From positions 558,001 to 622,000 of the forward strand of contig OW569344.1 of assembly GCA_937625935.1 (NCBI GenBank): a DNA stretch of 64,000 nt, in the 5' to 3' direction. This stretch comes from Tetramitus jugosus (Eukaryota > Protista > Heterolobosea). This document shows, piece by piece, positions 11,389-57,732 of this stretch. Within the stretch, counting starts at the first letter, position 1, and each line of letters begins with the position of its first letter. Both the position numbers and the translations under genes were made by a program. The notes beneath the pieces were generated by a model, which made no database searches, was not told the DNA's origin, and saw nothing but the letters and a program-made list of their open reading frames with translations.

Positions 11389-13251
11389 ATGAATTTTGTT
11401 GAAGATGCAATCTCCTCAACCTTCATCGCCCTATCCTTTCAAAATTCTTCAATGACTCATCAACAGACTGAGGCACTGAGAATCACTGCTGGCACAACAG
11501 CCATTCTCAGCATGGTCGGCTCTCTGTTCATCATATTTTCAAGTCTCTTATTCGGTGATTTATTCAAATCGTTGGCCAATCGATTGATCATGTACTTGTC
11601 GTTTGCTGATCTCATTGCAGGCAGTTCCTACATTATTCGCCTGTCTGGATTAGATTTGATGGATAGTAGTGCAGGTGATATGGCATGCAAAGCAGAAGCA
11701 TTCTTGATGACAACGTTCGAGATGAGTAGTGTCTTTTGGAGTAGTTGTATCTGTATGCACTTGTTGTTGAGTATCATGTTGCCGGATTGGAGAGTGGAGA
11801 GAATGGAACCGGTTTATCATGTGGTCAGTTGGGGATATCCTATTCTGTGGAGCAGTATTGTTTTGGGAATGAATCGGTTTGGACGGGCATCCAATTGGTG
11901 TTGGCTCATACCTGATGAGCCTAGAGCTTATTTTTCATGGAGATTTTTCACATTTTTGCCCGTTTATGTCCTCATGTTTTTCAATATTGCAGTATATATT
12001 GGTGTTTGTGTGTCGTTGAGGCGAATGTTGCGACAGACAAAGTATGCAACCATATTTTCTAGTGTCGATCGAAGAAAGGAGTTGAAGGCATTGAGACAAT
12101 TGTCGATTATTATGATTGCCTTCTTTATTACGTGGATACCACCAATGGCCAATCGATTGACTGAGAGTTTGAATCCATTGTCAGTGTATTTCTGGTTGGA
12201 TATGGCTCAGGCTATAACCAATCCGTTGCAAGGCTTTTGGAATGTGGTGTTATATGGTTATCGGTTCGTTCCGCGTTACTATCGAGCATTCAAGAATTGG
12301 AAGAGCAAATGGGTCAATAAGCGAATTGAGTTGAATGAAAAGAGGAATGATATGGAGAAGAAGAAACGAAATGGAGTGCTCTCGGAGAATGATGCATTGA
12401 AATCAAACGATTTACGATCTCTGTCCAGTATTGGAAGTTTTGTGACTACGTCTGGATGGGATGATGAGACACTGAATCCGTCATCAGAGTCATCGTCCGT
12501 TAACAAAGGCACGAAACTCTTCTGGAGCAAACTGAAATTTTGGACACAATACTATTGCTTGTGCGTGTGCTGTCCTTGTGGAATACCAGACAAGAAGCAT
12601 TTATCAAGCATGTTCAGCAGCGCGGACAACTCTCTCATGTTTCATCCAAGGGAGAGCATGAGCTTTTTGCGGCCGCCATCTCTACGGTCAGAGCTCATCC
12701 ATCCAGACCATTTGAGTGAATCAGAAACGGACGATGAAGATGGACTTCCGTTCCTTTTGCATCACCAGAATCCATACAATCCAGTACCCACTCCCGATCG
12801 TAACAGACATCGTCCATACATTTCTGAATCCTCCGCCAGCAACAATATTGCCTTTGTGCCAAACAAGGACAGAGTACGAACGATGGTTATGCCTTCATCC
12901 ATCTCCCCTCAAACACCTCCAAAGTACTACCTTCCTGATTCAATACCGTCCAGTTTTTCAAGTCCTGACCGAAACAGGCATCAATACGATGGTGTTTCGA
13001 GTTTGGCAGAGAGTATGCCTCTATCTCATGAATCTAGGCACTCTCGGTTCATGTTCAACCCACCTAACATGATGGACCACAACAACAATACCAACAATAA
13101 CCAACTAGTGACACCTCGGCCTCTGACAACCGAATACCGGTCACCACTCCCTAACAGAGACCCAACCCCTCGAGACAATGCATATCCCAGAAGACAATAC
13201 CACCATCACAAGTATCCATCTGAAGATTCTATTGACCCTGATGAGTTTTGA
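11389..13251 (+). CDS. 7-TM GPCR, Dictyostelium cAR / plant GCR1-like family
   Basis: Seven hydrophobic helices; NRLIMYLSFADL, C..EAF, YHVVSWG, NWCW, FFITWIP and PLQGFWN motifs; long disordered C-tail. Confidence 0.88.
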   Translation: MNFVEDAISSTFIALSFQNSSMTHQQTEALRITAGTTAILSMVGSLFIIFSSLLFGDLFKSLANRLIMYLSFADLIAGSSYIIRLSGLDLMDSSAGDMACKAEAFLMTTFEMSSVFWSSCICMHLLLSIMLPDWRVERMEPVYHVVSWGYPILWSSIVLGMNRFGRASNWCWLIPDEPRAYFSWRFFTFLPVYVLMFFNIAVYIGVCVSLRRMLRQTKYATIFSSVDRRKELKALRQLSIIMIAFFITWIPPMANRLTESLNPLSVYFWLDMAQAITNPLQGFWNVVLYGYRFVPRYYRAFKNWKSKWVNKRIELNEKRNDMEKKKRNGVLSENDALKSNDLRSLSSIGSFVTTSGWDDETLNPSSESSSVNKGTKLFWSKLKFWTQYYCLCVCCPCGIPDKKHLSSMFSSADNSLMFHPRESMSFLRPPSLRSELIHPDHLSESETDDEDGLPFLLHHQNPYNPVPTPDRNRHRPYISESSASNNIAFVPNKDRVRTMVMPSSISPQTPPKYYLPDSIPSSFSSPDRNRHQYDGVSSLAESMPLSHESRHSRFMFNPPNMMDHNNNTNNNQLVTPRPLTTEYRSPLPNRDPTPRDNAYPRRQYHHHKYPSEDSIDPDEF

Positions 13252-35771: not shown

Positions 35772-36084
35772 TGTTTTTTCGTTTTGATAATAACGTTCCC
35801 TTTTTGTTTGCTTTTTTTCTCTGGTGATGGAGTTTTCTCACACAGAATTTTGTCATTTTCATCCGCGAAAAGCGGTGAATTTGCGTAAAGAATCAATAAA
35901 CCCGTTGAACTCTCAAAATCTCTGAACCTTACAAAATCGTCGGTCCACTGTTTCCGCGACGATGTATCGGAATTGTCTTTCGCAACACTCCGTCAGATCG
36001 ATTCATCGCCAGAATTTACACACACAAAAAGCTCCAACAAAGCAAAAAAACATCAACAACAAAACATCAACCAAACAAAATACA

Positions 36085-37245
36085 ATGTCCAAGAAGAAGG
36101 GTGTCCAAGAAGTTTCACTAAAGGCTCAAGTCCTAGGCAGAGTCGGTACCAACCTTGAAATTGGTGTCGTTGGTCTTCCAAACGTTGGAAAGAGTTCATT
36201 CTTCAACGTTCTCACAAACTCTCAAGTTCTTGCAGAGAATTATCCATTTGCTACCATTGATCCCAACACTGCTAGAGTTGCTGTTCCTGATGAGAGATTT
36301 GAGTGGTTGGTTGAACATTGGAAACCTGCAAATGACGTTGCAGCTGTGTTGAATGTGACTGATATTGCTGGATTGGTCAAGGGTGCCAACGAAGGAGAGG
36401 GTCTCGGTAACGCCTTCTTGTCTCACATTAAGGCAGTGGATGCCATTTTCCACATGGTCAGAGCATTCGACGACAGTGATATTACTCATGTCGAAGGCAA
36501 CATTGATCCAATCAGAGACATTAAGATTATTAACAGAGAGTTGCGATTGAAGGACATTGCCTTTTTGGAGAAGCACCGTGAAGTGACTGCAAAACTCGCA
36601 AAGCAAAAGAAGGAAAAGATGGAAGAAGTGTTGGTTTGTGAAAAGGCACTCAAGATGCTCCAGGAAGATGAATTGGAAGTGAGATTTGGTGAATGGAAGG
36701 CAAAGGAGATTGAAATTTTGAACTCGTTGCAATTGTTGACCGCAAAGACTGTTGTCTATCTCATTAACATGTCTCCAAACGACTATGCCAAGAAGAAGAA
36801 CAAGTTTTTGCCTGAACTTCAAAAGTTTGTGGTTGAGGAGAGAGGTGAACAAATGATTCCATTCTCTGTTGCATTCGAAGAAAAGTTTGCAAAGTTGGAC
36901 GAAGAAAAGAAGAATATCATGAGAAACGAGAAGAAGTTGGACAGTGTTTTGCCACATATTATCAAGACTGGTTACAGTGCACTCGGTCTCATTTACTTCT
37001 TCACTGCCGGTAAGGACGAAGTGAAGGCATGGACGATCAAGGCTGGTATGAAGGCACCACAAGCCGGTGGCAGAATTCACACTGACTTTGAAAAGTTGTT
37101 CATTTGTTGTGAAGTGATGGCTTTTGCTGACTATAAGGAGTTAGGCTCAGAAACAGCATGCAAGAATGCTGGAAAGTACCTGCAACAAGGTAAGGCTTAC
37201 ACTGTGAGCGACGGTGATATCATCTTCTTCAAGTCTGGCAGATAA
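36085..37245 (+). CDS. OLA1: Obg-like ATPase 1 / YchF
   Basis: GVVGLPNVGKS, NYPFATIDPN, DIAGLVKGA, GLGNAFLSHI, FFTAGKDEVKAWTI, APQAGGRIHTDF and DGDIIFFK. Confidence 0.97.
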   Translation: MSKKKGVQEVSLKAQVLGRVGTNLEIGVVGLPNVGKSSFFNVLTNSQVLAENYPFATIDPNTARVAVPDERFEWLVEHWKPANDVAAVLNVTDIAGLVKGANEGEGLGNAFLSHIKAVDAIFHMVRAFDDSDITHVEGNIDPIRDIKIINRELRLKDIAFLEKHREVTAKLAKQKKEKMEEVLVCEKALKMLQEDELEVRFGEWKAKEIEILNSLQLLTAKTVVYLINMSPNDYAKKKNKFLPELQKFVVEERGEQMIPFSVAFEEKFAKLDEEKKNIMRNEKKLDSVLPHIIKTGYSALGLIYFFTAGKDEVKAWTIKAGMKAPQAGGRIHTDFEKLFICCEVMAFADYKELGSETACKNAGKYLQQGKAYTVSDGDIIFFKSGR

Positions 37246-54163: not shown

Positions 54164-55528
54164 TTATTGAGGTAGATTGACACCTGCTGCATCAAACAAT
54201 TGTCTATTGTACGTCATGACAGTATTCTCCAATTGGGCATACTGAGCTTGAATATTCAATAGATATTGCATGTGCTTTCTCTTCTCTTGTTCAATTCGAG
54301 CTCTCATCTCTGCAGCAATTCTTTCATTAGCTTGAATTTGCTTCATGACACTGTCATTGTTCTCATCTATTGCTGATTTGGCTCTCTTGGCATCATTGAG
54401 CATCTGAAGACAGTGTCGCTTCTTCGCTTCGTGCTCCTTGTTCATTCTCTCAAACTTTTCGTTCATGGTAATGATTTGTCTGTTCAAATGCTTTTCCTTG
54501 CTTTGCAAGTCAGCGCACTCATCCTGCTTCTCTCCAATGTCAACTCTCTTTTGCTTTGACATCAGTTTTAATTCTTGAAATCTTTGCTTCTCCTTCTCAT
54601 ACTCTTGCAGTGTTTTAATTGCCTTGTCTGTTCCTTCAGCTACTCTCTTGATCGAGTCTAATTGAGTCTTACAATCTTGAGATTTCACTTGAGCCATTGA
54701 CACATCAGTTTTGGCAGAGATTACCTCTGATCTCAACTCCTCAATTCTCTGTCTCAATTGTTCTGGATTATGAACGATTTGATCCCTCAATTGTGAACAC
54801 TCGGCTTGCAATTGATTCAATTGCTGAGTATCAGATTCAATCTTTCTTACATTGTCCATGTGACCTTGTTTCAACTGTTTTCTCTGATTGACAAGTTCAG
54901 TCTGTGTCAAGTGCATACTTTGAATTCTCTTGGCTAATTCTCTCGTCTCATTGTCGAGAGCTTGGATGGCAGGCTCTTCCTTTTGTTGCAATTCAACATA
55001 TTGCTTCAATTGTTCGACATTAGAGTTGAACTCTTCTTCAATATGGTTCTTTTGTTGAGCCAATTGATCGACTTGAGCTACCATGTCTTGATACTTCTTC
55101 AACTCAGTTTCTCTGAATCGAGCAAAGTTGACAACACCACATAGGATGATGTGAAATCTTCTTCCAGTAGGATTCAACAAATCGTTCAGACTAAAATCTG
55201 AGATGCCAGCTGCTTCCATCATCAATCTGGTGTGTCTGAAAATGTCCATCTCAATCACTCCTTGTTCATAACAGTCAATGGGATGAGAAAAGAGATCTGA
55301 TGGGCAATCTTGCAGAAAGTTACTTCGTTCAATCGTATCCAAAGACTTATCGAGCATAATATCAATGATTGCAAGCATGGCTTTTCTCACGTCCATGCTT
55401 GTTGGGTTCTTCAATTGAGCAGAAGAGAGGGGAATGTGTAACTCCTTGATGCATTCGATCAGTTCTTGGTCGTCAAGAATCTTGAAGCCATATTTGTTAG
55501 CTGCAGTAGTATTCAGTCTGTTGCTCAT
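54164..55528 (-). CDS. NUF2: Kinetochore Ndc80-complex subunit Nuf2
   Basis: FKILDDQELIECI...QLKNPT, GISDFSLNDLLNPTGRRFHIILCGVVNFARFRE, then coiled coil with QIVHNPEQL. Confidence 0.92.
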   Translation of the reverse strand: MSNRLNTTAANKYGFKILDDQELIECIKELHIPLSSAQLKNPTSMDVRKAMLAIIDIMLDKSLDTIERSNFLQDCPSDLFSHPIDCYEQGVIEMDIFRHTRLMMEAAGISDFSLNDLLNPTGRRFHIILCGVVNFARFRETELKKYQDMVAQVDQLAQQKNHIEEEFNSNVEQLKQYVELQQKEEPAIQALDNETRELAKRIQSMHLTQTELVNQRKQLKQGHMDNVRKIESDTQQLNQLQAECSQLRDQIVHNPEQLRQRIEELRSEVISAKTDVSMAQVKSQDCKTQLDSIKRVAEGTDKAIKTLQEYEKEKQRFQELKLMSKQKRVDIGEKQDECADLQSKEKHLNRQIITMNEKFERMNKEHEAKKRHCLQMLNDAKRAKSAIDENNDSVMKQIQANERIAAEMRARIEQEKRKHMQYLLNIQAQYAQLENTVMTYNRQLFDAAGVNLPQ

Positions 55529-55591
55529 TATGATTATGTTTGTTTGTCTGCTCTCCCAGATATTCACAAAGCACAAAAACAATAACGGTAA

Positions 55592-55607
55592 ATTTTGGCG
55601 CCAAAAT
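55592..55607. promoter_or_regulatory. Perfect 16-bp palindrome ATTTTGGCGCCAAAAT (E2F-like site) upstream of NUF2
   Basis: Lies 64-79 bp upstream of the NUF2 ATG; matches TTTSSCGC on both strands. Confidence 0.55.
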
Positions 55608-55614
55608 GGAAAAA

Positions 55615-55628
55615 ACGTTTTCAGCTGA
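55615..55628 (+). repeat. Target-site duplication, left copy (ACGTTTTCAGCTGA)
   Basis: Identical to 56956-56969. Confidence 0.9.
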
Positions 55629-56955
55629 TTTTTTTTTTTTATTTTTTTTTTTCCATACAACCATGTGTGCTTGCGCAGCAAGCACACGATTGCTCATTTA
55701 TTGACTTGTTTTGTGAGTGACGACCCGTAGGGCGTCATTCACTCTTCTTCTCTTGTTGTCCCCGACGGTGCACCTACAGGTTGGAAGAATCACTCTGGTG
55801 AGTGTTTTGGTTGATGCCCTTCATCAAAGACCGTAACCTTGTAGTAGGACCGTCGATGGACACAGAGCCATCTGTTGTTGTTTTCTTGTTTTGGGCCTTG
55901 TTGCTCATCAGATCACCCAGTGTGATCCTAGCACTCCTCTTCTTGTTGTCATTGAGTTGTGGACTCTGAATCTCCTTTTCGGAGTCATCGTCCACATCCA
56001 CAATGACTGGTTCGTCCTCAGTCAAACCATACCTTTTGCGAGCAGCAGCCAGCGCCAATGCAGCAATTTCCTTTTTCACTCTGGCGAACACTGGAGAAGT
56101 GGCATTCACTTGCTCCAGAATTTGCCGGTTCTCAGCACTGAGCTGTACAACAGGCACTGATGGCAGTGGTGTTGCTACAGTCCTCTGTTCTTCTGCCTCC
56201 ACTAGCTCAGGAGTCTCCATCCTAGCAATGGCTTGGGCAACTTCTTGTTCCGGCATTGGAACCGGTTTGTTGCCCCCTTGACCCTTTGTCTTTGCCAATT
56301 CCTTGGTGAGTTCTGTGACCTGTCGACGCAGTCCGTCAACCACCGTCAGCAGCTCCTCGTACATCTTCGTCAACCTCTTGTTGACAGCCTTGAGAGGATC
56401 ATGTGGTCTCTCGACGTATCGAGTGACCGTGGCCTTGACCTTGCTCTCTCCGCTGAGCACTGCCCGTGCATAGGTTTCATCACCCATGACCACGAAAGCA
56501 GTGTCACGCTTCTTGAGCACACTGGCAACCTTCTCAGGTCCCAGTAGCTTCTTGATGTCGTCCACTGACATGTTCTTCATGCCATGGACGACCACCTTTC
56601 TTGTGCAATCAACACTGCGCTTGGGTGCAGCAGTGCTGTTGCCAATCCTCCTCTGTTTGTTGAATAGCTCAACAAAGTCATAGATGCGGTCACCCTTGAC
56701 CGTCACCCATGCAACAAAGCGTTGCTGGCCTTTCCTCTTGATGACCTGGACTCGGTTGAGCCAGTCACCAAACTCCTCTCCGATCTTTCTTGCCAAAGAT
56801 GACTGAGAGACACCATTACCGTTGCCAGTAATGACGACCTCTCTGTCACTTGGCGCAGAGCCTTTCCGTGCAGTGGTCCACACTGCATAACGGCTGTTGC
56901 CGTATTCCTTCACCAAATTTGTTGAATCACCAGACATGTGATTCCGTTTTTTTCT
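55629..56955 (-). mobile_element. Poly(A)-tailed non-LTR-type retro-insertion carrying only an ORF1-like gene, upstream of tRNA-Asn
   Basis: Direct repeat ACGTTTTCAGCTGA at 55615-55628 and 56956-56969; T12-A-T11 tract at 55629-55652 (minus-strand poly(A)) abutting the left copy; interior more GC-rich than neighbours. Confidence 0.85.
55774..56937 (-). CDS. Element-encoded ORF1-like protein (two RRM-like folds plus coiled coil)
   Basis: 387 aa, intact; REVVITG/RFVAWVTV and RKVVVHGM/TAFVVMGD resemble RNP2/RNP1 strands; heptads LTKMYEELLTVVDGLRRQVTELTKEL. Confidence 0.7.
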   Translation of the reverse strand: MSGDSTNLVKEYGNSRYAVWTTARKGSAPSDREVVITGNGNGVSQSSLARKIGEEFGDWLNRVQVIKRKGQQRFVAWVTVKGDRIYDFVELFNKQRRIGNSTAAPKRSVDCTRKVVVHGMKNMSVDDIKKLLGPEKVASVLKKRDTAFVVMGDETYARAVLSGESKVKATVTRYVERPHDPLKAVNKRLTKMYEELLTVVDGLRRQVTELTKELAKTKGQGGNKPVPMPEQEVAQAIARMETPELVEAEEQRTVATPLPSVPVVQLSAENRQILEQVNATSPVFARVKKEIAALALAAARKRYGLTEDEPVIVDVDDDSEKEIQSPQLNDNKKRSARITLGDLMSNKAQNKKTTTDGSVSIDGPTTRLRSLMKGINQNTHQSDSSNL

Positions 56956-56969
56956 ACGTTTTCAGCTGA
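56956..56969 (+). repeat. Target-site duplication, right copy (ACGTTTTCAGCTGA)
   Basis: Identical to 55615-55628. Confidence 0.9.
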
Positions 56970-56997
56970 AAAAGGTATGTCGGAGATTCTATATATA

Positions 56998-57070
56998 TCC
57001 TCCATGGCTCAGTTGGTAGAGCGTCAGGCTGTTAACCTGCAGGTCGTTGGTTCGAGCCCAACTGGAGGAG
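56998..57070 (+). tRNA. tRNA-Asn (GTT)
   Basis: Acceptor TCCTCCA/TGGAGGA, D-arm GCTC/GAGC, anticodon loop CTGTTAA, T-arm GTTGG-TTCGAGC-CCAAC, discriminator G; upstream TATATA and downstream T5. Confidence 0.96.
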
Positions 57071-57076
57071 AACACC

Positions 57077-57081
57077 TTTTT
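57077..57081 (+). terminator. Pol III oligo(T) terminator of tRNA-Asn
   Basis: TTTTT 6 nt after the tRNA 3' end. Confidence 0.7.
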
Positions 57082-57114
57082 CATTCTTCAAGCCAGCCGA
57101 AACACAAAAATTGA

Positions 57115-57732
57115 ATGCAGCCGAACGATCATACCAAGGACGTGATCTCCAACGATGAACTTTTGTTTGAGACAAGCAGGAGACGTCTTGCCATTCTTCA
57201 ACAACAGATTTCACTGAGTAACACGCTGCAACAACAAGACGATCACAACAGCAATGCCTCTGCTGTCGTATTGGACTCTTCACAGCTGGTGCTTCGCACA
57301 TTGGAACCTGATGACTATCACAAGGGTTATTTACAACTATTGTCGCAATTGACCAACGTTGGAGAGGTTGATCAAAACATGTTTGAACAGCGGTTCAATC
57401 AAATTCGACAATTGTACGGCAAAGACACTTGTTTCTTGTTTGTGATTGAGGATCGAACAAGGAGACGCATCGTAGCTTGTGCCACATTGCTCATAGAGCT
57501 AAAATTTTTGCATCAATGCAGCTCGGTTGCCCATGTGGAGGATGTGGTTGTTGATCGCGCGTATCGCGGCTACAGATTGGGTCAGAGATTAATGGATGCT
57601 TGTAAGCAAAAGGCGCAAGAACATAATTGCTACAAGATTATTCTGGATTGTTCGGAGGATGTGGCGCCGTTTTATGAGTCATGTGGCTTTGAACAGAAGG
57701 GATATCAAATGAGAATGGACTTGCCTCATTGA
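57115..57732 (+). CDS. GNA1: Glucosamine-6-phosphate N-acetyltransferase
   Basis: LRTLEPDDYHKGYLQLLSQLTNVG, ATLLIELKFLH, HVEDVVV...RGYRLG, CYKIILDC, FYESCGF. Confidence 0.95.
   Translation: MQPNDHTKDVISNDELLFETSRRRLAILQQQISLSNTLQQQDDHNSNASAVVLDSSQLVLRTLEPDDYHKGYLQLLSQLTNVGEVDQNMFEQRFNQIRQLYGKDTCFLFVIEDRTRRRIVACATLLIELKFLHQCSSVAHVEDVVVDRAYRGYRLGQRLMDACKQKAQEHNCYKIILDCSEDVAPFYESCGFEQKGYQMRMDLPH

What the first reader, a model, noticed from the sequence alone, without database searches (positions are those of the whole stretch)
55615..57070. Candidate tRNA-gene-targeted, RT-less non-LTR retroelement inserted 43 bp upstream of tRNA-Asn
Seen: a perfect 14-bp direct repeat (55615-55628, 56956-56969) brackets a 1327-bp minus-strand unit. 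The unit has an 18-nt 5' leader, one intact 387-aa ORF, a ~120-nt 3' UTR and a poly(A) tail. Its 5' end faces the tRNA 5' end, 43 nt from tRNA +1. Known: TSD plus poly(A) is the signature of target-primed reverse transcription. Dictyostelium TRE5 non-LTR elements insert roughly 50 bp upstream of tRNA genes in this same orientation, with ORF1p contacting TFIIIB, a safe-harbour strategy in compact genomes. Inference: this is an analogous, probably independently evolved, non-autonomous element that keeps only its ORF1 and borrows RT/endonuclease in trans. The perfect TSD and open ORF suggest recent activity.
Basis: partly seen in the sequence, partly recalled or inferred. Interest (0 to 1): 0.95.

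Follow-up and report, generated by a model that had tools for sequence, protein, structure and literature searches.

The report
ORF1-only retroelement aimed at tRNA genes
This is a real, recently active jumping gene that carries only an RNA-binding protein gene, borrows its copying enzyme from larger relatives, and always lands about 45 bp upstream of tRNA and 5S RNA genes; the host appears to be a heterolobosean soil amoeba, far from the slime mould where this strategy is known.

Summary
The window holds a 1327-bp minus-strand unit. It has a perfect 14-bp target-site duplication, an 18-nt leader, an intact 387-aa ORF, a 121-nt 3' UTR and a 24-nt A-tail. Its 5' end lies 42 nt from tRNA-Asn +1, head to head.

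It is one of at least 62 5'-intact copies (93-100% identical) in the 26-Mb genome. Of 40 copies examined, 25 lie 42-61 bp (one 13 bp) upstream of tRNA genes with 17 different anticodons. Four lie upstream of 5S genes, two beside tRNA-like genes, and 9 have no RNA polymerase III (Pol III) gene directly adjacent; most of these sit behind the A-tail of another element. The duplications are 12-19 bp and all different. On the tRNA side they start at -25 to -30, usually -28.

Longer elements encoding ORF1 and ORF2 (endonuclease, reverse transcriptase, zinc finger) use the same site. They share the unit's 5' end (ACGCAGAAAAAAA) and its 3' end (AATAAA, a GCAAY/GGUUGU stem, poly(A)). The unit's ORF1 models as two RRM-like domains plus a coiled coil and is under purifying selection (dN/dS about 0.27). 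Identical copies at different loci show very recent activity.

The design matches Dictyostelium TRE5-A.2 and mammalian HAL1. A single-gene tree places the host in Heterolobosea, and ORF1 has no named relatives, so convergence is plausible but unproven. Other first-stage notes had already flagged this system elsewhere in the genome.

The parts
55615..55628 (.). Target-site duplication, copy next to the A-tail, on the side away from the tRNA (ACGTTTTCAGCTGA)
   Evidence: Perfect 14-bp direct repeat with 56956-56969. Other copies have different 12-19-bp duplications at the same junctions.
55629..55652 (-). Poly(A) tail: 24 nt, 23 A and one T
   Evidence: Read directly. Every copy ends in an A-run of variable length.
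55653..55773 (-). 3' UTR (121 nt) with AATAAA and two hairpins
   Evidence: RNA fold -40.7 kcal/mol, z = -3.66 against shuffles. Homologous to the 3' UTR of reverse-transcriptase-bearing elements.
55657..55693 (-). Terminal stem-loop: GCAAUC, inner hairpin GUGUGCUUGC-UGC-GCAAGCACAC, then GGUUGU. It is followed by AUGG and the A-tail.
   Evidence: The outer stem (GCAAY paired with GGUUGU, or GUUGU in family 2) followed by AU(U/G)(A/G)An closes the unit, ORF1-only family 2 and the partner-type RT tails. Two RT tails (upstream of L028 and L049) share only the terminal TGTTGTATGG(A)n.
55713..55742 (-). First 3' UTR hairpin (GUGAAUGACGCCC-UAC-GGGUCGUCACUCAC)
   Evidence: The matching hairpin AUGACGCUC-UGC-GAGCGUCAU in reverse-transcriptase elements differs by a paired T-A to C-G change.
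55774..56937 (-). ORF1, 387 aa plus stop: the only gene of the unit
   Evidence: Intact in 33 of 40 copies. Median dN/dS 0.27. 29% identical to the ORF1 of the autonomous element in L055.
56620..56850 (-). ORF1p residues about 30-106: first RRM-like domain (strand-helix-strand-strand-helix-strand)
   Evidence: AlphaFold2 model, pLDDT 80-90. Top Foldseek matches are tandem-RRM proteins.
56413..56604 (-). ORF1p residues about 112-175: second RRM-like domain
56284..56397 (-). ORF1p residues 181-218: long helix, probable coiled coil
   Evidence: Relatives give only weak, sub-threshold Pfam matches to coiled-coil-type families here.
56938..56955 (-). 5' leader (AGAAAAAAACGGAATCAC). It lacks the ACGC and variable A-run that begin most family copies.
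   Evidence: The same ACGC(T)AGAAAAAAA start is seen on autonomous elements in L055 and L060.
56956..56969 (.). Target-site duplication, copy on the tRNA side
56970..56997 (.). 28-bp spacer between the duplication and tRNA +1
   Evidence: the spacer is 25-30 bp (median 28) in 23 tRNA-adjacent copies.
56998..57070 (+). tRNA-Asn(GTT), the RNA polymerase III gene that marks the target
   Evidence: ARAGORN; Rfam RF00005, 67.4 bits.

Best explanation
The unit is a non-autonomous, ORF1-only non-LTR retroelement. It belongs to a community of LINE-like elements that integrate next to genes transcribed by RNA polymerase III (Pol III). The likely cycle is as follows. The element is transcribed from its first bases (ACGCAG...) and polyadenylated about 45 nt after its AAUAAA. 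ORF1p, modelled as two RRM-like domains plus a coiled coil, is translated and probably coats its own RNA in cis. ORF2p (AP-type endonuclease, reverse transcriptase, zinc finger) comes in trans from autonomous ORF1+ORF2 elements in the same genome. Those elements have the same 5' start and the same 3' terminal stem. The complex is positioned by something common to tRNA and 5S genes, most likely DNA-bound TFIIIB. The two strands are nicked near -44 and -28 relative to tRNA +1, and about 7 bp closer at 5S genes. The A-tail primes reverse transcription at the nick on the far side from the gene. The result is an insertion whose 5' end faces the gene, flanked by a duplication of about 16 bp. Shown here: the anatomy, copy number, target geometry, shared ends, selection on ORF1 and recent activity. 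Inferred: supply of ORF2p in trans, cis action of ORF1p, TFIIIB as the landmark, and which protein reads that landmark.
For: There are at least 40 full-length copies at 93-100% identity and 62 intact 5' ends against 0 for the reversed control pattern. Twenty-five of 40 copies are head to head with tRNA genes at 42-61 bp, one at 13 bp, covering 17 anticodons. Four are next to Rfam-confirmed 5S genes and two next to tRNA-like hits. The other 9 have no Pol III gene directly adjacent; most sit behind the A-tail of another element. Duplications are 12-19 bp (median 16) and all different; the spacer to tRNA +1 is 25-30 bp and to 5S is 19-22 bp. The unit has no reverse-transcriptase, endonuclease or other significant Pfam match. 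The genome has 74 RVT_1 hits in ORFs of up to about 1330 aa with endonuclease, reverse-transcriptase and zinc-finger or RNase H domains. Full-length partners read: tRNA, about 46 nt, ACGC(T)AGAAAAAAAAC(A)C, ATG, ORF1 (435 aa in L055), then ORF2 whose ATG overlaps the ORF1 stop (ATGTTGA or ATGTTAA). The partner's ORF1 is homologous to the unit's, at 29% identity. Their 3' ends match: AATAAAGYGAGCAACCGAAATGGTTGTAT(A)n against AATAAATGAGCAATCG[hairpin]ATGGTTGTATGG(A)n. The 3' UTR folds well. ORF1 is intact in 33 of 40 copies. dN/dS is 0.27 overall, 0.28 for shared variants and 0.58 for singletons. Two pairs of copies are 100% identical at different loci with different duplications: L012/L014 and L029/L046. 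Published TRE5-A.2 and engineered TRE5-A elements show that this design works: ORF2p in trans, cis preference of ORF1p, an essential 3' structure, and ORF1p binding TFIIIB in vitro (PMC3159450).
Against: No experiment or read evidence here shows mobilisation. Laying public contigs found no empty allele, and only metatranscriptome contigs that could be DNA carry-over. The ORF2 family that serves this unit is not settled: several diverged reverse-transcriptase families end in similar tails. The conserved 3' motif could serve polyadenylation rather than recognition by ORF2p. The leader is only 18-27 nt and no promoter was identified. TFIIIB contact is by analogy only. The endonuclease assignment of the closest partner family is below Pfam's threshold, although the N-terminal and SRID motifs are visible.
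Confidence: 0.88

Rival explanations
1. The anatomy is as above, but ORF2p, not ORF1p, reads the Pol III landmark. ORF1p would be only an RNA chaperone or coat, retained because of cis preference. This is a rival only for the targeting step.
For: The nick positions are set by the endonuclease, which the unit does not encode. At least three ORF1 lineages with 29-50% identity give the same geometry, which is easy to explain if a shared ORF2p docks.
Against: Several diverged ORF2 families, 45-70% identical in pieces, and one endonuclease/reverse-transcriptase/RNase H family coexist, so ORF2 is no less diverse. Tight tRNA adjacency was checked only for the zinc-finger families, not for the RNase H family. 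In Dictyostelium it is ORF1p that binds TFIIIB subunits in vitro (PMC3159450). Nothing here tests either protein.
Confidence: 0.35
2. The copies are not a self-propagating lineage. Each would be an independent internal deletion of a full-length ORF1+ORF2 element, made during or after insertion.
For: LINE copies are often rearranged, and 5'-truncated reverse-transcriptase copies are common in the stacks.
Against: At least 40 copies share the same junction between the ORF1 stop and the 3' UTR. They form their own subfamilies. Their ORF1 is only 29% identical to the ORF1 of the sequenced autonomous elements. No ORF2 was found downstream of any unit-type ORF1.
Confidence: 0.03
3. The ORF1 gene copies are a host-domesticated gene family kept beside Pol III genes, for example as insulators or regulators. 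The purifying selection would then be host-level selection.
For: dN/dS is about 0.27 and 33 of 40 frames are intact. The position next to Pol III genes is fixed.
Against: Every copy has an A-tail and its own duplication. Identical copies occur at different loci. Copies stack and interrupt one another. Seven of 40 frames are broken. The termini are shared with reverse-transcriptase elements.
Confidence: 0.03
4. It is an ordinary processed retrocopy of a host gene that happened to land near a tRNA gene.
For: The single window copy on its own shows only a duplication, an A-tail and one ORF.
Against: There are 62 5'-intact copies, all examined ones at the same kind of site. ORF1 is homologous to the first ORF of reverse-transcriptase-bearing elements. 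Own-genome ORF1 searches returned only element-type copies, and no intron-containing parent is indicated.
Confidence: 0.01

Closest known systems
Dictyostelium discoideum TRE5-A.2, the non-autonomous derivative of TRE5-A (PMC3159450, PMC5911963)
   Same: It is a non-LTR element that keeps ORF1 and lacks a working ORF2. It is mobilised by ORF2p in trans, with ORF1p preferring its own RNA. It needs a structured 3' end. It integrates head to head 40-54 bp upstream of tRNA genes, and 37-41 bp upstream of 5S genes. Here the first base of the element core lies 42-61 bp from tRNA genes and 40-53 bp from 5S genes. The far edge of the duplication lies at 40-46 bp (tRNA) and 35-38 bp (5S).
   Different: The host appears to be a heterolobosean, not a dictyostelid. 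ORF1p shows no detectable similarity to any named protein. The 5' leader is only about 27 nt, with no A or B modules. No ORF2 remnant is left. The unit's ORF1 is only 29% identical to its partner's ORF1, so it is an old independent lineage, not a recent deletion. In the partner, the ORF2 ATG overlaps the ORF1 stop.
Mammalian HAL1 ('half-L1'), the ORF1-only derivatives of LINE-1
   Same: It encodes only an ORF1-type protein, depends on a LINE for ORF2p, and forms long-lived lineages of its own. This rests on my own knowledge of the HAL1 literature; the term appears in PMC5753468.
   Different: HAL1 has no Pol III-gene targeting. L1 ORF1p is ordered coiled coil, RRM, C-terminal domain, whereas here the order is RRM, RRM, coiled coil. 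The hosts are unrelated.
Polysphondylium pallidum NLTR-B and Dictyostelium purpureum NLTR-A (PMC5006619)
   Same: These are non-LTR elements, only distantly related to the TRE elements, that independently acquired integration upstream of tRNA genes. NLTR-B inserts at 39-64 bp. They carry an RNase H domain, as does one family in this genome (L031).
   Different: They are autonomous elements in dictyostelids. No ORF1-only lineage has been described for them.
Yeast Ty3
   Same: It uses TFIIIB-bound Pol III genes as a safe harbour in a compact genome (PMC5911963).
   Different: It is an LTR element that uses an integrase, inserts 1-4 bp from the transcription start, and integrates by a different chemistry.

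Membership tests
Non-LTR (LINE-type) retroelement inserted by target-primed reverse transcription | Variable-sequence target-site duplication flanking the insert | tested here: met
   14 bp in the window. 12-19 bp and all different in 27 of the 29 copies directly beside a tRNA or 5S gene.
Non-LTR (LINE-type) retroelement inserted by target-primed reverse transcription | 3' poly(A) tail; no terminal repeats | tested here: met
   No LTR or terminal inverted repeat was found.
Non-LTR (LINE-type) retroelement inserted by target-primed reverse transcription | Encodes its own reverse transcriptase (autonomy) | tested here: not met
   No reverse-transcriptase or endonuclease domain. It has one 387-aa ORF only, so it is non-autonomous.
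ORF1-only non-autonomous LINE derivative (HAL1 or TRE5-A.2 type) | Its single ORF is homologous to the ORF1 of autonomous elements in the same genome | tested here: met
   29% identity with conserved blocks to the ORF1 of L055, which is followed by ORF2.
ORF1-only non-autonomous LINE derivative (HAL1 or TRE5-A.2 type) | Shares its 5' and 3' termini with a reverse-transcriptase-encoding partner | tested here: met
   5' end ACGC(T)AGAAAAAAA. 3' end AATAAA, GAGCAAYCG ... ATGGTTGTAT, poly(A).
ORF1-only non-autonomous LINE derivative (HAL1 or TRE5-A.2 type) | ORF1 is kept open and under purifying selection in the propagating lineage | tested here: met
   33 of 40 frames intact. dN/dS 0.27; 0.28 for shared variants.
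ORF1-only non-autonomous LINE derivative (HAL1 or TRE5-A.2 type) | Mobilised by ORF2p supplied in trans | not testable with these tools
   Needs a retrotransposition assay. It is inferred from the lack of a reverse transcriptase together with recent copies.
TRE5 family of Dictyostelium | Integration about 40-54 bp upstream of tRNA genes in the opposite orientation, and closer at 5S genes | tested here: met
   compared with Table 1 of PMC5911963.
TRE5 family of Dictyostelium | ORF1 and ORF2 sequences related to the TRE5 proteins | tested here: inconclusive
   A profile search of 1.84 billion proteins gave 37 unnamed environmental hits only. The word-indexed ORF2 search gave no dictyostelid hit. 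No reverse-transcriptase phylogeny with TRE references could be run.
TRE5 family of Dictyostelium | Modular 5' and 3' UTRs (A, B and C modules) and a dictyostelid host | tested here: not met
   The 5' leader is about 27 nt. The host groups with Naegleria, Willaertia and Acrasis in a single-gene OLA1 tree, support 100/98.
SINE | Head derived from a Pol III gene, with an internal Pol III promoter and no coding capacity | tested here: not met
   No tRNA, 5S or 7SL match inside the unit. It encodes a conserved 387-aa protein.
Processed retrocopy of a host gene | One or few copies placed at random, with a host parent gene | tested here: not met
   62 copies, all examined ones at Pol III genes or in stacks.

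The most novel reading that the evidence does not exclude
A whole community of Pol III-gene-targeted LINE-like elements arose in Heterolobosea independently of the dictyostelid TRE elements. It reproduces the TRE5 geometry down to the shorter offset at 5S genes. Within it, ORF1-only elements are old, selection-maintained lineages (hyperparasites) with their own tandem-RRM ORF1p. Their only links to the autonomous partners are a 13-nt 5' start and a GCAAY/GGUUGU terminal stem. This would make the system a natural experiment on whether ORF1p or ORF2p reads TFIIIB.
Probability: 0.5. Interest if true: 0.75.

Novelty: new variant of a known kind. Interest (0 to 1): 0.62.

Why it matters
Targeting of tRNA genes is the textbook 'safe harbour' for mobile DNA in compact genomes. 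For non-LTR elements it has been worked out only in Dictyostelium. Here the same solution appears in what looks like a different eukaryotic supergroup: the same distance, the same orientation and the same 5S offset, with an ORF1 that has no named relatives.

Three ORF1 lineages (two of them ORF1-only) and several ORF2 lineages hit the identical site. That offers a comparative handle on two open questions: which protein reads TFIIIB, and what minimal RNA ends an ORF2p needs.

The window copy sits in what was a 126-bp gap between a Nuf2-like gene and tRNA-Asn. This shows how tight the harbour is.

Tried and rejected
1. 'Split LINE' idea (ORF2-only elements plus ORF1-only elements). No ORF1 hit lay upstream of any long reverse-transcriptase ORF. 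I rejected the idea after fetching C18 and C34 pieces, which show ORF1 directly upstream of and overlapping ORF2. The own-genome search had simply not scored these diverged ORF1s.

2. Empty-allele and expression test. Contigs from three runs labelled 'organism A' (a code set by the tool) and one soil metatranscriptome were laid on 55300-57300. The flanks are present and the unit is at much higher summed depth. Contigs break at the repeat edge (55620), and no contig bridges an empty site. RNA-library contigs match the unit but cannot prove transcription. There is no verdict either way.

3. Pfam on ORF1 gave nothing. The ESM Atlas feature search scored 0.79 or less, which is uninformative.

4. 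The ORF2 search for named relatives gave only a 24%-identical fish LINE. PDB hits are to R2 and L1 reverse transcriptases only. The reverse-transcriptase clade is unresolved.

5. A genome-wide tRNA list via Rfam scored only 63 of 1602 candidates, so the share of occupied tRNA genes could not be computed.

Only three small pieces were fetched afterwards, so the full-length partner was seen in parts, not end to end in one locus.

7. Literature searches for this system in Heterolobosea or other non-dictyostelid amoebae found nothing. A search for the assembly by its contig count also found nothing.
Full report
OBSERVATION. ACGTTTTCAGCTGA occurs at 55615-55628 and at 56956-56969. Between the two copies lies a 1327-bp unit read on the minus strand. 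It has an 18-nt leader, an ATG, a 387-aa ORF (56937-55774 including the stop), a 121-nt 3' UTR and a 24-nt A-tail with one T. tRNA-Asn(GTT) lies at 56998-57070 on the plus strand. The unit's 5' end therefore faces the tRNA 5' end across 42 nt.

IT IS A FAMILY, AND IT IS AIMED. A DNA search of the window's own genome (26.35 Mb, 56 contigs) found at least 40 full-length copies at 93-100% identity. A 29-nt pattern across the leader and start codon found 62 sites, against 0 for the reversed control.

I oriented 40 copies with 1.5-kb flanks. They fall into four groups.
- Twenty-five have a tRNA gene head to head at 42-61 bp (one at 13 bp), covering 17 different anticodons.
- Four have a 5S rRNA gene confirmed by Rfam.
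- Two have a weak tRNA-like hit at the same distance.
- The other 9 have no Pol III gene directly adjacent; most begin right after the A-tail of another element, that is, in stacks.

Of the 29 copies directly beside a tRNA or 5S gene, 27 have their own 12-19-bp duplication (median 16), all different in sequence. On the gene side the duplication starts 25-30 bp (median 28) from tRNA +1 and ends at -40 to -46. At 5S genes it spans about -20 to -37. The window copy fits this pattern: spacer 28, duplication 14.

These figures match those published for Dictyostelium TRE5, which inserts 40-54 bp upstream of tRNA genes and 37-41 bp upstream of 5S genes in the opposite orientation (PMC5911963, Table 1). 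An environmental contig also shows a unit copy about 50 bp upstream of a tRNA-Asn; its flank matches locus L017.

TRUE ENDS. Most copies begin (A)0-14 CGCAGAAAAAAACGGAATCAC-ATG. The window copy starts at AGAAAAAAACGG. Its duplication ends in AAAACGT, which resembles the missing AAAACGC. It is therefore slightly 5'-truncated, with microhomology at the junction.

At the 3' end all copies read AATAAATGAGCAATCG, then a perfect 10-bp hairpin, then ATGGTTGTATGG(A)n. The 3' UTR RNA folds into two hairpins (-40.7 kcal/mol, z = -3.66).

THE PARTNERS. The unit has no reverse-transcriptase or endonuclease domain. The genome has 74 RVT_1 matches, many in open frames of 1270-1330 aa. These frames carry an AP-type endonuclease, a reverse transcriptase and a zinc finger. 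One family carries endonuclease, reverse transcriptase and RNase H instead.

For a while I considered that the reverse-transcriptase elements might lack ORF1, because no ORF1 hit lay upstream of them. Small pieces fetched from C18, C23 and C34 settled this. Full-length elements read as follows:
- a tRNA gene;
- about 46 nt of spacer;
- ACGC(T)AGAAAAAAAAC(A)C;
- ATG and ORF1 (435 aa in L055; frameshifted in L056 and L060);
- ORF2, whose ATG overlaps the ORF1 stop (ATGTTGA or ATGTTAA) and which begins MLKVMWYNINGIKGK...LLIQEA, a typical endonuclease N-terminus.

This ORF1 is homologous to the unit's, at 29% identity with many invariant positions. The C34 element also lies directly upstream of unit copy L010. 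Its 3' end is AATAAAATCGGAGCAACCGAAATGGTTGTATT(A)n.

So the unit and the autonomous elements share the 5' start ACGCAGAAAAAAA and a 3' terminal module. That module consists of AATAAA, an outer stem GCAAY/GGUUGU, then AU(U/G)(A/G) and poly(A). The unit merely has an extra hairpin in the loop. The first 3' UTR hairpin is also shared and shows one compensatory change.

A second ORF1-only family, about 1.5 kb with a 414-aa ORF1 46% identical to the unit's, has at least 25 copies and the same architecture.

THE PROTEIN. An AlphaFold2 model built on a 7-sequence alignment is confident for residues 10-175 (pLDDT 80-90). It shows two consecutive strand-helix-strand-strand-helix-strand domains, then a helix at 181-218, then disorder. 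Foldseek's best matches are tandem-RRM proteins: DND1 RRM12, HuD, HuR, U2AF65 and NONO/SFPQ, with probability 1.0 and E values of 1e-5 to 1e-4. TM-scores are modest because half of the model is disordered.

A profile search against 1.84 billion representative proteins found only 37 hits, all unnamed and mostly short environmental fragments. One of them, L058, is again an ORF1 overlapped by a downstream ORF.

SELECTION AND AGE. ORF1 is intact in 33 of 40 copies. Median pairwise dN/dS is 0.27. Variants shared by two or more copies give 0.28 and singletons give 0.58. The lineage that makes new copies therefore needs a working ORF1p, as expected if the protein prefers its own RNA.

The copies fall into subfamilies with 382-, 387- or 388-aa ORFs. 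Two pairs, L012/L014 and L029/L046, are 100% identical over 1.3 kb although they lie at different Pol III genes with different duplications. The family has therefore moved very recently. The window copy is 98.5% identical to its nearest relative.

HOST. A conserved window gene, Obg-like ATPase 1 at 35962-37245, has as its best named relatives Naegleria fowleri (67%), Willaertia magna (64%) and Acrasis kona (63%). A maximum-likelihood tree places it inside that heterolobosean clade with support 100/98, apart from Balamuthia, Capsaspora and animals. This is one gene, and no dictyostelid sequence was among the rows, so the placement is a good lead rather than proof.

Sequencing runs that hold the stretch are labelled with a coded organism, or as soil, groundwater, rhizosphere and freshwater metagenomes.

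I found no paper describing tRNA-targeted LINEs in Heterolobosea. Spaller et al. found no TRE-like elements outside the dictyostelids they examined (PMC5006619).

MECHANISM. Shown: the anatomy, the targeting geometry, the shared ends, the selection and the recent copies. Inferred by analogy with TRE5-A (PMC3159450):
- ORF2p from the autonomous elements acts in trans on the unit's RNA, recognising the terminal stem and A-tail.
- ORF1p acts in cis.
- The landmark is TFIIIB, the factor common to tRNA and 5S genes.
- The nicks fall at about -44 (first strand, priming on the A-tail) and -28 (second strand).

Two points stay open. It is not known whether ORF1p or ORF2p reads the landmark. The conserved 3' module may also, or instead, serve polyadenylation, since AAUAAA lies 23-25 nt before the tail in the partner.

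WHAT FAILED. Laying public contigs gave no empty allele and no proof of transcription. The reverse-transcriptase clade could not be assigned. Occupancy of all tRNA genes could not be computed.

VERDICT. It is not a member of the TRE5 family on the features tested, but it works like TRE5-A.2 and HAL1. I rate it a new variant of a known kind and moderately to highly interesting. Other first-stage notes had already flagged the same system on other pieces of this genome, and I checked several of their claims here.

Noticed in passing
L005:230-1471 (-), L008:2857-4098 (+); at least 25 copies in the genome: A second ORF1-only family of about 1.5 kb. Its ORF1 is 414 aa and 46% identical to the unit's. 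Its 5' end is ACGCCGATGAAAAAACGAACACACACCCC and its 3' end is CGCAACGTGGTGCGTGAGCACCATTTGTTGTATT(A)n. It is often stacked directly behind unit copies.
   Followed up: partly
L042:3330-3360 (-): A 5'-truncated reverse-transcriptase copy starts inside the end of its endonuclease domain, yet carries AAAAAACGC, the family's normal 5' start, at its junction 37 nt from tRNA-Gln. Possible causes are a template switch, an internal deletion or chance. It is unexplained.
   Followed up: no
window 55668-55682 and the same place in other copies: The loop of the terminal 3' hairpin occurs in two forms, TGC and GCA, between identical stems. This looks like a loop-inversion polymorphism among copies.
   Followed up: no
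L031 (G000:C1:201002-204787): A separate LINE family whose ORF has endonuclease, reverse-transcriptase and RNase H domains (1332-aa frame). This recalls the RNase H-bearing NLTR elements of dictyostelids. Its target preference was not examined.
   Followed up: no
window 55531-55628 and 56970-56997: Before the insertion, the gap between the start codon of a Nuf2-like gene (about 55530, minus strand) and tRNA-Asn was only about 126 bp. The unit now lies in that gene's upstream region, in the same orientation, so read-through into the gene is conceivable.
   Followed up: no
flanks of L001-L050, positions about -2 to -12 of the tRNA genes: Many tRNA genes have an ATAT-rich word (for example GATATATATAG, AGATATT, TCATATTT) just upstream of +1. 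It may be a TATA-like Pol III start element of this organism.
   Followed up: no
G000:C54 and G000:C56: Two contigs have tRNA genes at identical coordinates (941, 12773, 14364, 14438, 44585). They are probably the same organellar (mitochondrial) genome assembled twice.
   Followed up: no
L009:2821-2836: One unit copy lies only 13 bp from tRNA-Thr, and no duplication of at least 9 bp was detected. The normal spacer seems to have been deleted after insertion.
   Followed up: no
window 11389-13251 (+): A 620-aa ORF matches the Pfam 'slime mold cyclic AMP receptor' family (Dicty_CAR, E = 2.8e-14) in a genome that otherwise looks heterolobosean. The whole window is packed with long ORFs uninterrupted by stop codons.
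   Followed up: no
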